Shown here: piece after piece, positions 3,920-24,794 of the stretch | How the letters are laid out: every line of letters begins with the position of its first letter | How positions within the stretch are numbered: the stretch's first letter is position 1 | DNA from: Ostrea edulis | Lineage: Eukaryota | Reading direction: 5' to 3' | DNA length: 64,000 nt | Assembly: GCF_947568905.1 (NCBI RefSeq) | Contig: NC_079172.1 | Location: 10,292,001 to 10,356,000 of the forward strand | Translations under genes and position numbers: made by a program | The notes under the pieces: model-generated | Database searches by the model: none | Told to the model about the DNA's origin: nothing | What the model saw: the letters and a program-made list of their open reading frames with translations, nothing else

Positions 3920-3988
3920 TTACTGCATGTCGTCAGTTATAGAATGAAACGGCTGCTTGTCGGTTCCCCCTCTTCTCGTCACGGCTTT
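3920..3988 (-). CDS. iGluR-like terminal exon: KAVTRRGGTDKQPFHSITDDMQ*
   Basis: Strong ttttttcttgcag acceptor, phase 0, TAA at 3922-3920. A minus-strand AATAAA lies at about 3538-3543. Confidence 0.7.
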   Translation of the reverse strand, partial: KAVTRRGGTDKQPFHSITDDMQ

Positions 3989-6900
3989 CTGCAAGAAAAA
4001 AACCCATCTAATATAAATTTAACATTCGATTCAGCAACAAGCATACTTGTTTTGCTTTTTATAGATATATTCAGTGATATTACAGCATATGGAATTAAAT
4101 TTTTAATTTCAAATTCAGCTAATATCAGGGGAAAATATCACACCGCTAAGAGCTTAACGCCAATCTCTTATCTCAGCTATTAATGATCGGGACTCTTGAT
4201 AAGCTAGTTAGTCGTAAACACATCATAATCTTCATCTTTAAGATATTCTATTCCCAATGAAGAGGATATTTGCAGCAGGTAAACAATTGATTTAAAGTTG
4301 CTGAAAATACTAAACATTATTCTATTATGTAAAATGTATAAGCACACAATTTAAATGACGTTTAGTGTTAATTTATAAGAGATAGAAGTCAAATTTGGAA
4401 AAATAAAATTTTAAAAAATATTACACGGTGACTTATGCTTTTTAGTACCCTAATTCAATGGTGATATCATTGTGGATCTTTTTGTACTTTATTTCTTTAT
4501 TTTTAATCTATGAAAAACGTCTTTTCCCATAGCTATAGATTTTAAAATTAAATTAATTAAGCCACATCTTTCCATTGTGAGATAAATTTCTAAAAGTCTC
4601 TCGGTGAACCCACTTTTTTAATATCTTCTGCTGTAGAAAATTTATATAATTTGCTCGATTTTATTCTTCGTTAAGAAAATATTTTGGGGCTGATTAGGAG
4701 AAGAACACCTTTATCCTTTGGAAGCGTTCGAGGGTTGGAATCCTGCTTGTGCCCAGGCCGCGTCAAAAATACCAGACGTAAAAATAGGTAGTGATTGCAC
4801 CTTCGCTAATTGCTCAGTATTTACAAATGAGAGTCTATGGGAAATGGTATTCGGACGAGACTTAAATATGGAGGTCCGAGACCTTAAATATGGAGGTCCG
4901 AGACCTTAGATACGGAGGTCTAATACCTTACGTACGAAGGTCCGAAATCCTTACGGAGGTCTGAGATCAGTCCCGTATCGCAGCAGGTGTTGGCAAATTA
5001 AATGACCTTCACTGCCACGGCCCTGATCGTCATGTGAAGGTCTACATGTATATTTCAGAAAGTTTCCCTACCGTCGACGACGTTTTAGTATAATATAAGT
5101 AAAGATAATTAAAACACAACCGTCTGAAGCTCTTCCTGAAAGTCGCACCCCTTTTTGTGATAATGATAATAGGTCTTTAAATGCGATTCTCCAAAAAGGA
5201 AATTCCCGATCCAATGATGAATGGAGCTTTTTTTGTTTGATAAATATTATAGAGAAGGTACGAATATTACTCACCTGCACCTTTCGTTCAGTGCATATAT
5301 CAAAAATCAGCAATCCAACTCCTACGACTATCCCTATGGCTAACAGAATGAACATGCTGCCGACTTTTTCCATACTTAGTGCATTGCTCTGAAAGAGATA
5401 TCCCGATGCGTCTTTCTTGCTGTTGAAAGAAGTAATGTATTCCAAATAATCGTCATAAAAATCTGTGTCACAGCCGCCGTCATTCTCCATCCATTTATCT
5501 GTCAGCTCCCGAATTTCGCCATCATTCTTCAGCTTAATAATGGCAACGTCAATATTTCTGCAGACATTGGCGTTCGCACACCCGAAAGCATACGACTTCC
5601 GAATAAAAGAATGGTGAATAAGCATCAAATCGCACGGTAACTGTCCTACATATTGTCGCGCGCTCAATTCCTCCATGATAAATGCATACTGCCCATTGCT
5701 GGTTCTAACTCTTTTGATTCCTTCTTCTGTACTTTTCACCAGTTGGTTGGGATTGTCTTTCAGGTGCTCTCCAATTTTTCTATCTACCTCATCCTTGGCC
5801 TCTGTGAAATACTTGTACGTACTTCCCATTTGAACTGTTCCAAATTGTATTCCGGATTGTTCCGAAAGCTGTTTGAATGAATGAGTAGGGGTGGTTGGAA
5901 TTTGTCTTTGTCCTTGCATCAGGTATACAGCAAAGGCTGATGCCCATGTGACGAATAGAATGATTAGAAACAATGACCAAAAGGCGACTAGAACTCTTGC
6001 AGCTCGGGAGGTACATTTGGATGGCGCAAGACTTCCTGAAAAGCAAGTTTTAATGTATAACGAAAAGAGATTGAAGAACTTTGAATAACTTAATTCAAAA
6101 TATGTAAATGTTTATTGTTAAATAATGATAAAAGTTATGTCGATCAAATTCACATGACTGATAAAATGAGTAGAAGTCAATCTTTTTGCACGTGAGCCGT
6201 TTTGGAAGCCTTATCCGCCTTTGGTAAAAATAAGAAAAAACAATTTTCAAAAATATGTGCGATAAATGATTGATTTTATTTCATATTTTCATAAAGAAAA
6301 AGTTTTAACCAAGAGATTTGTATGAAAATATGAATTGTTTTTAGAATATTCTAATTAAACATGCTCTTCCCATAGACTTGAAAGGAAAATTCCAAGTGAA
6401 ATAAATCGAACAGTAATCAAAATTTCAAATTCCTTTAGTGGATTATATTTGTTTTATAAACTCTAAAATGGTATTTGGGACAAACCTTGCGACTGATGTG
6501 ATAATGCACATGTTACTGTTACGAGAAACAGTGACATCTTTCACATCCGCCAACACAATTTCAGATAAAACAGCGAACTCACTACAAGATGTCTTACTCT
6601 TATTCTGCATGGAGCACTCGATAGACTATGGGCTGTTGTGCGTATAGAGCCTGCTCCTGGCTCTGTTATTAAGGGATGATACTTTCTTGGGTCACTATCG
6701 CATCAATCTCGGGATCGGAAAAATGAAAAATCCAAATAAGAACCCAGTAGCAGAAAATGCTGTTGGTGAACTTGAGGATGAACTGCCAAGACAAGACCCA
6801 AAGGGAGACTCAGACTTAGACTTGCTGCAGCTTTGGCACGACTAAACTCGCGTATTCGTGGCGGGAGTTTATCAGCTCGAGGAATGCACACTCAAAGCAA

Positions 6901-24700: not shown

Positions 24701-24794
24701 AATAAAATTCTGGAGTAATATCATGACATGAACTTACTGAAGTTAGAGAAGCTAGGCCACAGAGTAGAAACAGACACACGTGACGGGTCCCCAT
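3920..24794 (-). CDS. Ionotropic glutamate receptor / IR-like channel lacking an amino-terminal domain; complete 7-exon gene, 479 aa
   Basis: Exons 24794-24738, 24649-24614, 20963-20775, 11982-11747, 11596-11505, 6035-5275 and 3988-3920 are joined by GT-AG introns with matching phases. They sum to 1440 nt (479 aa plus stop). Domain order is signal peptide, S1, M1, pore loop, M3, S2, M4, short tail. Confidence 0.9.
4720..5085 (+). mobile_element. Degenerate tRNA-derived SINE with an internal 22-bp tandem expansion
   Basis: The body aligns with the reverse complement of 61030-61367. Four to five copies of cttaaatatggaggtccgagac occupy 4860-4965. Confidence 0.7.
5275..6035 (-). CDS. iGluR-like exon 6: M3, S2 lobe, M4
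   Basis: Frame of ORF 5068-5973. Motifs FGTVQMGST, EEGIKRV, YAFIMEE, PCDL, DKW...GGC and M4. Acceptor cttttcag, donor GTGAGT. Confidence 0.95.
6470..6935 (+). mobile_element. Decayed retrotransposon integrase fragment
   Basis: Frameshifted pieces RETVTSFTSA, KNPNKNPVAENAVGELEDEL and LARLNSRIR..LSAR resemble an integrase core, including the third acidic residue helix. Confidence 0.55.
9716..10596 (+). mobile_element. Helentron/HINE-like non-autonomous element carrying about 4.5 tandem 147-159-bp repeats
   Basis: Units gaatatcatgtgac... start at about 9841, 9988, 10147, 10305 and 10461. They are followed by a (gacg/gaca)n microsatellite and the hairpin cccgaactttctttagaaagtgcggg. A related inverted array lies at about 25845-26400. 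Confidence 0.7.
10690..11335 (+). mobile_element. RTE-clade LINE 3' fragment
   Basis: LHRILRIFWPNT..NEELYRRT, KRKW.WIGH and PGKRNRGRPRETWRRS, followed by a (taag)n tail. Confidence 0.8.
11505..11596 (-). CDS. iGluR-like exon 5: M1-M2 loop and pore loop (FDPLEDD...VIFYRLCLQG)
   Basis: 92 nt, phase 2 to phase 1, exactly bridging exons 4 and 6. It ends in LQG like iGluR pore loops. Absent from the ORF track. Confidence 0.85.
11747..11982 (-). CDS. iGluR-like exon 4: end of S1 plus M1 (DADIAAASLTMTAERAKVISFAHPF...)
   Basis: ctctgcag acceptor, GTAAGT donor. ADIAAASLT-T--R-VI-F--PF is the canonical iGluR S1 signature. Confidence 0.95.
12797..13606 (-). mobile_element. 5'-truncated CR1-like LINE with a 13-bp target-site duplication
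   Basis: The minus strand encodes QILHARLHMNSSSLKYHLF..DSPLCLCG..HYLLECP and has a 3' AATAAA. TSD tctgccaacggtt at 12784-12796 and 13607-13619. Confidence 0.85.
13669..14809. mobile_element. Helentron/HINE-type element carrying a ~166-bp satellite array (Cg170/BIV160-like)
   Basis: Termini aacaagaggcccatgggcc..gctcacctgag and ctcaggtgagctaaaaa. About five 166-bp units span 13733-14560, and a (gacg/gaca)n tract lies at 14718-14752. Confidence 0.85.
15343..17715 (+). mobile_element. Non-autonomous TIR DNA transposon (CMC/EnSpm-like), 2.37 kb
   Basis: TIRs ACCCAGCAGGCAC and GTGCCTGCTGGGT, with dense subterminal aacgtt/gacgtc repeats at both ends. No transposase ORF. No clean TSD was seen. Confidence 0.75.
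20775..20963 (-). CDS. iGluR-like exon 3: S1 lobe (DNPFVIKK...GLIPDLL...FGTQDKYNNWTGMIGELIKG)
   Basis: ttttcag acceptor, GTATGT donor, 189 nt. WTGMIGEL corresponds to the iGluR W-N-GMVGEL motif. Confidence 0.93.
21330..21940 (-). mobile_element. L1/Tx1-like LINE 3' fragment
   Basis: WSKIFKLPFKVTQESNLHWLQFQI plus decayed zinc-knuckle remnants, typical of the zf-RVT region. Confidence 0.6.
22386..22702. mobile_element. TTAA-flanked MITE (Kolobok-like) with an internal tRNA-like segment
   Basis: TTAA|GGTGGCT...AGCTACC|TTAA. A/B-box-like sequence on the minus strand at 22541-22603. Confidence 0.7.
23817..24090 (+). mobile_element. SINE-like repeat, same family as 1583-1830
   Basis: Near-identical to 1583-1830 and ends in an (atca)n tail. 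Confidence 0.8.
24614..24649 (-). CDS. iGluR-like exon 2 (36 nt): GQNVTYKVTTIL, first strand of S1
   Basis: ttttgcag acceptor and GTGAGT donor. YKVTTIL matches the VTTI start of iGluR S1. Confidence 0.85.
24738..24794 (-). CDS. iGluR-like exon 1: signal peptide MGTRHVCLFLLCGLASLTS
   Basis: ATG at 24794, hydrophobic core, GTAAGT donor in phase 0. Confidence 0.8.

What the first reader, a model, noticed from the sequence alone, without database searches (positions are those of the whole stretch)
3920..24794. Complete ATD-less glutamate receptor-family channel: signal peptide spliced straight onto the ligand-binding domain
The reconstructed 479-aa protein has only 19 aa of signal peptide and a 12-aa micro-exon before S1, so the ~400-aa amino-terminal domain of AMPA, kainate and NMDA receptors is absent. 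That architecture is known for vertebrate kainate-binding proteins, protostome tuning IRs and bacterial GluR0. Tuning IRs usually lose agonist residues. Here the GluA2-equivalent positions are kept: T480 and R485 (LTMTAER), S654 and T655 (GST), E705 (IMEE), Y732 (KSY) and the S2 disulfide (PCDL...GGC). It may be a minimal amino-acid-sensing receptor lineage of molluscs. Four of the seven exons are invisible in the ORF track, so automated annotation could easily truncate it.
Basis: partly seen in the sequence, partly recalled or inferred. Interest (0 to 1): 0.8.

Follow-up and report, generated by a model that had tools for sequence, protein, structure and literature searches.

The report
Short oyster glutamate-receptor-like gene, no ATD
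An oyster gene really does encode a complete, expressed glutamate-receptor-type protein that lacks the large outer domain, but it belongs to an old family already predicted in many molluscs, worms and brachiopods, so it is a solid but modest find.

Summary
On the minus strand, seven GT-AG exons (24794 to 3920) give a 1440-nt ORF of 479 aa: a 19-aa signal peptide, a 12-aa micro-exon, then S1-M1-pore-M3-S2-M4.

An RNA contig from the same species (1978 nt, no mismatches) carries the exon 3-2-1 junctions exactly as predicted. It continues 108 nt into a 5'UTR with two in-frame stops. No ATD coding was found.

Against GluA2, T480, R485, G653-S654-T655, E705, Y732 and the C718-C773 pair are kept. 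Y450 is Leu, the Q/R site is Leu, and SYTANLAAF reads TWASAFAVY.

- **Lineage:** it is not mollusc-specific. Orthologues of 425-518 aa, all ATD-less, occur in bivalves, gastropods, a chiton, cephalopods, a brachiopod, an annelid and a nemertean. Most carry automatic RefSeq names (glutamate receptor 1-4-like, U1-like, probable glutamate receptor).
- **Vertebrate KBPs:** these share the architecture and a rewritten pore but form a separate clade (AU test p = 0.01).

Most likely it is a KBP-like, amino-acid (probably glutamate) binding subunit with non-canonical gating. I found no paper describing the clade's missing ATD, but mollusc-wide iGluR surveys probably already include it.

The parts
24738..24902 (-). 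Exon 1: at least 108 nt of 5'UTR (24902-24795, two in-frame stops) plus the ATG at 24794 and a 19-aa signal peptide (CDS 24794-24738); donor GTAAGT
24614..24649 (-). Exon 2: 12-aa micro-exon (GQNVTYKVTTIL). It starts the first beta-strand of S1 and holds an NVT glycosylation motif
   Evidence: both junctions seen in the RNA contigs of X7 and X1
20775..20963 (-). Exon 3: first part of S1 (63 aa), including the Y450-equivalent Leu
11747..11982 (-). Exon 4: end of S1 with the LTMTAER motif (T480 and R485 equivalents), pre-M1 and M1
11505..11596 (-). Exon 5: M1-M2 loop and pore helix/loop, with Leu at the Q/R site (..RLCLQG)
5275..6035 (-). Exon 6: M3 with TWASAFAVY in place of SYTANLAAF, all of S2 (GST, IMEE, KSY, PCD...GGC), a 32-aa S2-M4 linker insert, and M4
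3491..3988 (-). Exon 7: last 22 codons plus TAA (3988-3920), a C-tail conserved among oysters.

Best explanation
The locus is an intact, transcribed, seven-exon oyster gene for a 479-aa subunit of the ionotropic glutamate receptor superfamily.

Architecture: the protein consists only of a signal peptide, the two-lobed ligand-binding domain (S1/S2), three membrane helices plus a pore loop, and a short conserved C-tail. It never had an amino-terminal domain in this lineage's recent history. It belongs to an old Lophotrochozoa-wide clade whose members are all ATD-less.

Inferred mechanism: an alpha-amino acid, most likely L-glutamate or a close acidic analogue, binds in the clamshell. The Arg (R485) and Thr (T480) equivalents would hold the alpha-carboxylate, and the Glu (E705) equivalent the alpha-amine. 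The Gly-Ser-Thr (653-655) equivalents would hold the side-chain carboxylate. Subunits would assemble through LBD and TMD contacts without ATD-guided sorting.

Pore: the Q/R site is Leu and the SYTANLAAF gate is rewritten, as in vertebrate kainate-binding proteins. I therefore think it works as a KBP-like subunit. That means ligand binding with atypical, weak or partner-dependent gating, rather than a fast AMPA/kainate-type channel.

Shown: the gene model, its expression, the missing ATD, the residue conservation and the clade. Inferred: the ligand, the assembly mode and the gating.
For: - Gene model and splice sites.
- RNA: the contig with exact junctions and a stop-containing 5'UTR is. Orthologue cDNAs (L001-L004) of 2.5-2.6 kb encode 480 aa, with an upstream in-frame TGA and an AATAAA near the 3' end.
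- No ATD: tblastn with two ATD-bearing relatives found no ATD-like hit in the window. The orthologues have no PF01094.
- Sequence similarity: Pfam PF10613 scores 108 bits, PF00497 52 bits and PF00060 41 bits on P0009. GluA2 is the best solved relative (E = 1e-55), colinear from the first S1 strand to M4.
- Fold: the AF2 model of P0009 has mean pLDDT 79.5, with the LBD above 90 and M1, pore helix, M3 and M4 present. Foldseek matches AMPA and kainate LBD-TMD chains at E about 1e-31 over about 445 columns.
- Residue table: R485 is kept in all 34 clade members. T480, E705, S654, T655 and both cysteines are kept in most. The Q/R site is W or L and M3 is degenerate in the clade and in vertebrate KBPs.
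- Constraint: dN is 0.21 with saturated dS against an orthologue. Among oysters, the M2 region (78-86% identity) and the C-tail (81-85%) are more conserved than S1/S2 (63-70%).
- Clade: oysters plus Mytilus 100/100, plus scallops 100/98.
Against: - There are no functional data for any member of this clade.
- Y450, the aromatic lid over the agonist, is Leu here and varies (F/I/L/Y/M) across the clade.
- The Pfam channel-domain score is barely above threshold (41 bits, against 145 bits for a bird KBP). A non-conducting role is therefore possible.
- Equally, the strong conservation of the pore region among oysters argues that the pore does something. It might be a genuine homomeric channel with unusual selectivity.
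- The structure and Pfam results come from the 70%-identical orthologue P0009. The spliced window protein could not be passed to those tools.
- The tissue of expression is unknown, because the run metadata are coded.
Confidence: 0.55

Rival explanations
1. It is a chemosensory 'tuning' ionotropic receptor (IR) in the protostome sense. It would be an ATD-less subunit on sensory epithelia (mantle edge, palps, gill) that detects dissolved amino acids and needs an ATD-bearing co-receptor such as IR25a to traffic and gate.
For: - It is ATD-less, from a protostome, and has a diverged pore.
- Published mollusc surveys define IRs largely by the missing ATD (PMC2924276, PMC4890853, PMC12837371).
- Bivalve tentacles express IRs (PMC11682238).
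- Free amino acids are plausible environmental cues for a filter feeder (my inference).
Against: [quoted passage not shown] Here R, T and E are all kept.
- The nearest ATD-bearing relatives by sequence that I could label are AMPA- and kainate-type, not IR-like. The 34 RefSeq/UniRef names read are 'glutamate receptor' or 'kainate' types, apart from uncharacterised ones; none is an 'ionotropic receptor' name.
- No IR25a/IR8a or IR-A to IR-D reference sequences could be obtained, so placement relative to IRs is untested.
Confidence: 0.2
2. It is a true homomeric glutamate-gated (or other amino-acid-gated) ion channel. The rewritten M3 and the Leu at the Q/R site merely change gating and selectivity, so it would be a minimal eukaryotic counterpart of bacterial GluR0 with an added M4.
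For: - The full S1-M1-P-M3-S2-M4 core is predicted with confident helices.
- The pore-loop region is the best-conserved part among oysters.
- The ligand-binding residues are intact.
- From my own memory, unchecked here: KBP pore domains conduct when grafted into GluK2 (Villmann et al. 1997), and a Xenopus short subunit was reported functional.
Against: - SYTANLAAF is the most conserved gating element of conducting iGluRs, and 7 of its 9 positions differ here.
- Lig_chan scores only 41 bits.
- From memory: vertebrate proteins of the same architecture generally give no homomeric currents.
Confidence: 0.2
3. It is a decaying or non-functional gene copy, or an assembly or annotation artefact, and the ATD-less ORF is accidental.
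For: Very long introns are filled with repeats. The channel-domain Pfam score is weak.
Against: - The ORF is intact, with canonical splice sites.
- A spliced mRNA contig has 0 mismatches.
- Colinear 479-481-aa orthologues exist in several oysters and 483-485-aa ones in Mytilus. dN is 0.21 while dS is saturated.
Confidence: 0.02

Closest known systems
Vertebrate kainate-binding proteins (RefSeq 'probable glutamate receptor'; frog 'glutamate receptor U1')
   Same: - About 480 aa, with the signal peptide followed directly by S1 and no ATD.
- R485, T480, E705, S654/T655 and the S2 disulfide are kept.
- Leu sits at the Q/R site and the SYTANLAAF motif is degenerate.
- RefSeq itself names several clade members after them.
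   Different: - They are not the same clade. KBPs group (100/99) with ATD-bearing AMPA/kainate-type sequences. Forcing them together with the lophotrochozoan clade costs 49.5 lnL units, AU p = 0.01.
- KBPs keep a much more canonical channel domain (Lig_chan 145 bits against 41).
- Identity to the window family is only 28-30%.
AMPA and kainate receptor LBD-TMD core (GluA1-4, GluK2)
   Same: They are the best sequence and fold matches, colinear over S1 to M4 at about 28% identity. The agonist-binding residues and the disulfide are the same.
   Different: The window protein has no ATD. Y450 is Leu, the Q/R site is Leu, and TWASAFAVY replaces SYTANLAAF. There is a roughly 16-residue insert between S2 and M4, and the C-tail is very short.
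Protostome variant ionotropic receptors (IRs; Croset et al. 2010, PMC2924276)
   Same: Protostome, no ATD, diverged pore.
   Different: - IRs typically have about 200-aa N-terminal regions and lack one or more of R/T/D-E. Here only a handful of residues (at most ~8) precede S1 and all three are kept.
- Phylogenetic relation to IRs was not tested.
Previously named but uncharacterised mollusc iGluR clades: 'GluR-m' subfamilies (Andouche et al. 2021, as cited in PMC11682238 and PMC12837371), class 'Zeta' (PMC8437780) and 'group II AKDF' (PMC12226733)
   Same: These are non-AMPA, non-kainate, non-NMDA iGluR clades of molluscs (and annelids), collected with PF00060 plus PF10613. They very probably include this family. 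An ATD-less Aplysia relative (XP_005107294) is in one such reference list.
   Different: I could not map the window clade to any of these names. The key paper is not held, and the others do not mention ATD absence.
Bacterial GluR0
   Same: Minimal iGluR without an ATD.
   Different: GluR0 lacks M4 and has a K+-channel-like pore (my own knowledge). The window protein has M4 and is clearly of the animal AKDF type.

Membership tests
iGluR superfamily | Pfam Lig_chan-Glu_bd (PF10613) plus Lig_chan (PF00060) in the order S1-M1-P-M3-S2-M4 | tested here: met
   P0009 scores PF10613 107.6 bits and PF00060 41.1 bits, both above cut-off. Window exons alone give PF10613 at 22-29 bits and PF00060 at 29.3 bits, just under cut-off because they are pieces.
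iGluR superfamily | LBD clamshell plus three TM helices and a re-entrant pore helix | tested here: met
   AF2 model of orthologue P0009 (mean pLDDT 79.5). Foldseek matches GluA/GluK LBD-TMD chains at E about 1e-31. Tested on the 70%-identical orthologue, not on the window protein itself.
Vertebrate kainate-binding proteins | No ATD, about 480 aa, ligand residues kept, non-canonical pore | tested here: met
Vertebrate kainate-binding proteins | Common descent with the chick/frog/fish KBP clade | tested here: not met
   The careful IQ-TREE analysis puts KBPs elsewhere (100/99). The AU test rejects the joint clade, p = 0.01. Caveats: the group was named after seeing a first tree, and the tree is unrooted.
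Vertebrate kainate-binding proteins | High-affinity kainate/glutamate binding without homomeric current | not testable with these tools
   Needs a binding assay and electrophysiology.
Protostome variant IRs | No recognisable ATD | tested here: met
Protostome variant IRs | LBD lacks one or more of the glutamate-contacting R, T, D/E (Croset 2010 criterion) | tested here: not met
   R, T and E are all present in the window protein and in most of the clade.
Protostome variant IRs | Falls in the clade descending with IR25a/IR8a | not tested
   Of the top 150 HMMER representatives I could name only some 45 (30 by look-up, the rest named), and none was an IR; I had no IR seed to fetch references.
AMPA/kainate receptors proper | ATD (PF01094) present | tested here: not met
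AMPA/kainate receptors proper | SYTANLAAF gate and Q/R/N at the pore apex | tested here: not met
   TWASAFAVY and Leu in the window protein. The labelled AMPA- and kainate-type reference representatives have SYTANLAAF and Q; of all 61 ATD-bearing representatives 44 have the canonical gate and pore apex.
Mollusc 'GluR-m' / 'Zeta' / 'group II AKDF' clades | Placement in the published trees | not testable with these tools
   The paper or dataset is not held, or the identifiers cannot be mapped.

The most novel reading that the evidence does not exclude
Lophotrochozoans carry an old (mollusc-annelid-brachiopod-nemertean ancestor), so far undescribed class of ATD-less iGluR subunits. Independently of the vertebrate kainate-binding proteins, it reached the same solution: drop the ATD, keep the glutamate-binding residues, replace the Q/R-site Gln and rewrite the SYTANLAAF gate. 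This would point to a recurrent, functionally meaningful 'short subunit' design (ligand sensor with non-canonical gating, or modulatory partner), not a lineage oddity.
Probability: 0.3. Interest if true: 0.55.

Novelty: new member of a known kind. Interest (0 to 1): 0.35.

Why it matters
ATD-less iGluR-type proteins are known (vertebrate KBPs, protostome IRs, bacterial GluR0), so the architecture itself is not new. What this locus adds is threefold.

First, it gives a cleanly verified, expressed example in an oyster. It comes from a clade that published oyster iGluR inventories omit: PMC10642201 lists only 794-1224-aa proteins.

Second, the clade is Lophotrochozoa-wide and uniformly ATD-less.

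Third, it combines an intact glutamate-type binding site with a rewritten pore, in parallel to, but apart from, vertebrate KBPs. KBP function has been an open question since 1989. An invertebrate counterpart with many paralogues and species could give a comparative handle on what such short subunits do.

For bivalve biology, the family is a candidate for sensing amino acids, or glutamate-like algal toxins such as domoic acid. That idea is speculative.

Tried and rejected
- **dN/dS:** the comparison with the orthologue cDNA L001 gave saturated dS (NG86 undefined), so only dN = 0.21 is usable.
- **ATD loss and gate rewriting:** the raw table looks strong. ATD-less proteins are 64 non-canonical against 4 canonical; ATD-bearing ones are 17 against 44. 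But the independent-pairs test had only 7 pairs and p about 1, so no claim of correlated evolution can be made.
- **Mapping to published names:** I searched the supplements of Ramos-Vicente 2018, the jingle-shell paper and the gastropod IR paper. There were no usable identifiers, apart from one Aplysia accession without a class label. Andouche 2021 is not held.
- **Literature on ATD-less lophotrochozoan iGluRs or KBP evolution:** nothing relevant turned up.
- **P0177 (Owenia, 992 aa):** I suspected it might be an IR25a-type anchor, but the PDB search shows it is kainate-type.
- **Close-relative constraint estimate:** the X1 contig (organism A) has 15 of 188 differences in exon 3. Six of the 7 listed are nonsynonymous, so it may be a paralogue, and I did not use it.
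- **RNA elements:** Rfam and tRNA scans found nothing inside the gene.
- **Earlier findings:** a word search for other glutamate-receptor notes in this genome returned nothing relevant.
- **Tool limits:** the spliced window protein could not be passed by reference. Pfam, PDB, structure and database searches therefore used exon references or the 70%-identical orthologue P0009.
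Full report

Yes. The ORF list shows three minus-strand ORFs with iGluR-like text: 20673-20900, 11743-11952 and 5068-5973. Two of them give sub-threshold Pfam hits to the glutamate-binding S1 domain.

A word-based homology search with the largest exon found 479-481-aa proteins from other oysters. 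They include Saccostrea echinata 'glutamate receptor 3-like' and S. cucullata 'probable glutamate receptor'. tblastn of the S. echinata protein against the window found all coding pieces.

Reading the minus strand gave seven exons:

| Exon | Coordinates |
|---|---|
| 1 | 24794-24738 |
| 2 | 24649-24614 |
| 3 | 20963-20775 |
| 4 | 11982-11747 |
| 5 | 11596-11505 |
| 6 | 6035-5275 |
| 7 | 3988-3920 |

All six introns are GT..AG. The joined CDS is 1440 nt (479 codons plus TAA) with no internal stop. It aligns end to end with the orthologues at 65-70% identity, with only single-residue indels.

**2. Is the missing ATD real or an annotation gap?**

Reads were laid on window:20750-26749. Run X7 is from the window's organism and has depth only on exons and repeats, so it behaves as RNA. 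It contains one 1978-nt contig without a single mismatch, laid as 20774-20962, then 24614-24648, then 24737-24902. The skipped parts (3650 and 88 nt) end CT..AC on the plus strand, which is GT..AG on the gene's strand. This confirms the exon 3-2-1 junctions.

The contig also shows that the 5'UTR is contiguous with the genome for 108 nt above the ATG. That stretch has two in-frame stops. X7 depth is zero from 24950 to 25749. Contigs cannot prove a transcription start. Even so, an upstream coding exon could not read into this ORF through exon 1.

The contig length equals 166+36+189+1158+429. It therefore fits exons 4-7 spliced as predicted, plus a 429-nt 3'UTR. An AATAAA lies 377 nt after the stop.

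Further support:
- A second run (X1, another organism, about 92% identity) shows the same two junctions.
- Orthologue transcripts L001-L004 (2.5-2.6 kb) encode 480 aa. They have a TGA two codons before the ATG and an AATAAA near the 3' end.
- tblastn with two ATD-bearing relatives found only the S1, TMD and S2 exons in the whole 64-kb window.
- Pfam finds PF10613, PF00497 and PF00060 but no PF01094 in the orthologues.

**3. Ligand-binding and pore residues**

The HMMER alignment of P0009 to rat GluA2 was combined with the window/P0009 alignment. The canonical GluA2 numbering is my own knowledge of the motifs APLTITLVRE, GSTKEF, LLESTM, SKGYG, PCD and GEC.

| GluA2 position | Window protein |
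|---|---|
| T480, R485 | kept (LTMTAER) |
| G653, S654, T655 | kept (MGST) |
| E705 | kept (IMEE) |
| Y732 | kept (KSY) |
| C718, C773 | kept |
| Y450 | Leu |
| P478 | Ser |
| L650 | Val |
| Q/R site | Leu (CLQG in place of MQQG) |
| SYTANLAAF gate | TWASAFAVY |

The pore findings agree with a sibling first-stage note on the same gene (s1-281950).

Pfam's channel model scores only 41 bits on P0009, against 145 bits on a bird kainate-binding protein. Among oysters, however, the M1-M2 loop and pore helix (78-86% identity) and the C-tail (81-85%) are better conserved than S1/S2 (63-70%). The altered pore is therefore constrained, not decaying. dN against an orthologue cDNA is 0.21, with synonymous sites saturated.

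An AlphaFold2 model of P0009 was built with a 44-sequence alignment. It has mean pLDDT 79.5, and the LBD is above 90. M1, the pore helix, M3 and M4 are present. The first S1 strand starts at residue 22, right after the signal peptide. A low-confidence insert lies between S2 and M4. Foldseek's best matches are GluA1-4 and GluK2 LBD-TMD chains, at E about 1e-31 over about 445 columns.

**4. What family is it?**

The word-based search with the full-length orthologue and the exhaustive HMMER search (329 representatives at E of 1e-30 or better) show many proteins of 425-520 aa alongside ATD-bearing receptors of 800-1100 aa. Cluster look-ups gave organism names.

In a FastTree of 148 LBD-TMD cores, the window protein falls in a 34-member group (support 97) in which every member is ATD-less. 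The members are:
- **Bivalves:** oysters, Mytilus, scallops, unionids and Solemya.
- **Gastropods:** Haliotis, Patella, Gigantopelta and Lymnaea.
- **Other molluscs:** the chiton Liolophura, and Octopus and Argonauta.
- **Non-molluscs:** the brachiopod Lingula, the annelid Owenia and the nemertean Tubulanus.

A careful IQ-TREE analysis (69 rows, LG+C20 PMSF) gave the following:

| Grouping | Support |
|---|---|
| Oysters + Mytilus | 100/100 |
| The above + scallops | 100/98 |
| Whole lophotrochozoan group as one side of a branch | 47/87; 50% of bootstrap trees |

The inner clades are firm; the outer boundary of the group is not.

Vertebrate KBPs form their own clade (100/99), next to ATD-bearing AMPA/kainate-type sequences. 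Forcing KBPs and the lophotrochozoan group together is rejected (delta lnL 49.5, AU p = 0.01). Two caveats apply: I named the group after seeing the first tree, and the tree is unrooted.

Other ATD-less groups occur in the nemerteans Lineus and Tubulanus, in Aplysia and in the hemichordate Glandiceps.

Across all of these, R485 is invariant and the Q/R site is W or L with a degenerate M3, exactly as in vertebrate KBPs. The raw association between 'short' and 'non-canonical gate' is striking: 64 against 4, versus 17 against 44 in ATD-bearing proteins. A phylogenetically independent-pairs test has no power here (7 pairs, p about 1). I therefore do not claim correlated evolution.

**5. How it most likely works**

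Shown: it is an expressed, constrained LBD-TMD-only subunit with an intact alpha-amino-acid binding set. G653 and T655 are the 'glutamate-type' combination according to the criteria quoted in PMC8437780.

Inferred: it binds L-glutamate or a similar amino acid, and it assembles without ATD-guided sorting. Because the gate and pore apex are rewritten as in KBPs, it should have atypical, weak or partner-dependent gating.

Rivals:
- a protostome IR-type chemosensory tuning subunit (0.2);
- a true homomeric channel with unusual gating (0.2);
- a dead gene or artefact (0.02, effectively refuted).

The IR reading fails the Croset criterion of lost ligand residues. Its phylogenetic criterion could not be tested, because I obtained no IR reference sequences.

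**6. Comparison with the literature**

- The Pacific-oyster iGluR inventory lists 12 genes of 794-1224 aa, so it contains no member of this family (PMC10642201).
- Mollusc-wide surveys recognise uncharacterised clades that very likely include it. These are the 'mollusk-specific GluR-m' subfamilies (Andouche 2021, cited in PMC11682238 and PMC12837371). Others are a mollusc-only class 'Zeta' (PMC8437780) and 'group II AKDF' from molluscs and annelids (PMC12226733).
- None of the papers I could read mentions absence of the ATD. I could not map the clade onto their names.
- KBP biology (no ATD, ligand binding, usually no homomeric current, pore functional when grafted) is cited from my own memory of the 1989-1997 literature. 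It is not held in the library.

**7. Verdict**

The 'ATD-less, agonist residues kept' part is right and now has transcript support. The 'mollusc lineage' is really a Lophotrochozoa-wide family that is already present as automatic RefSeq predictions. 'Channel' remains unproven.

Novelty: a new, well-verified member of a known kind (short, KBP/IR-like iGluR subunits).

The most novel reading still open is that the family is an undescribed ancient class convergent with vertebrate KBPs (probability about 0.3).

Interest: 0.35.

Noticed in passing
window 23810-24075 (intron 2 of the gene); also 21950-22750: An extremely abundant interspersed repeat. Summed contig depth is 2e4 to 4e5 in all four runs, with many loose ends at 23810 and 23850. 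It has no Rfam or tRNA match.
   Followed up: partly
window 20775-20963, run X1 (organism A): A 364-nt contig from another organism shares both exon junctions but differs at 15 of 188 bases in exon 3. Six of the 7 listed differences are nonsynonymous. It may be a paralogue, or S1 may evolve fast; this is unexplained.
   Followed up: partly
P0044 (Lineus longissimus XP_064648822, 989 aa): One RefSeq model contains two complete ATD-less iGluR units head to tail (residues 21-472 and 503-981). It is either two merged tandem genes or a true tandem protein.
   Followed up: no
window exon 7, 3920-3988, and orthologues: The cytoplasmic C-tail (..RRGGTDKQPF..ITDDMQ) is the most conserved part among oysters (81-85% identity). 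This suggests a conserved intracellular partner or trafficking signal.
   Followed up: partly
protein collection: The window's own exon 6 is represented only by an unspliced ORF-style prediction (P0001). The P0005-P0007 oyster transcripts (up to 116 member sequences) have no NCBI-named protein in their 90% clusters. The gene may be missing or mis-modelled in some oyster annotations.
   Followed up: no
window 47107-47179 (-): A tRNA hit (Rfam 38 bits). ARAGORN calls it with an odd four-base anticodon, so it is possibly a tRNA-derived repeat or pseudogene.
   Followed up: no
window 30025-32183 (+): ORFs of a LINE-type reverse-transcriptase element (broken into several frames), upstream of the gene.
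   Followed up: no
window 57701-60130 (+): A single-exon 809-aa ORF with a RING/B-box-like cysteine pattern and an NHL-like C-terminal region, of the TRIM-like kind common in bivalves.
   Followed up: no
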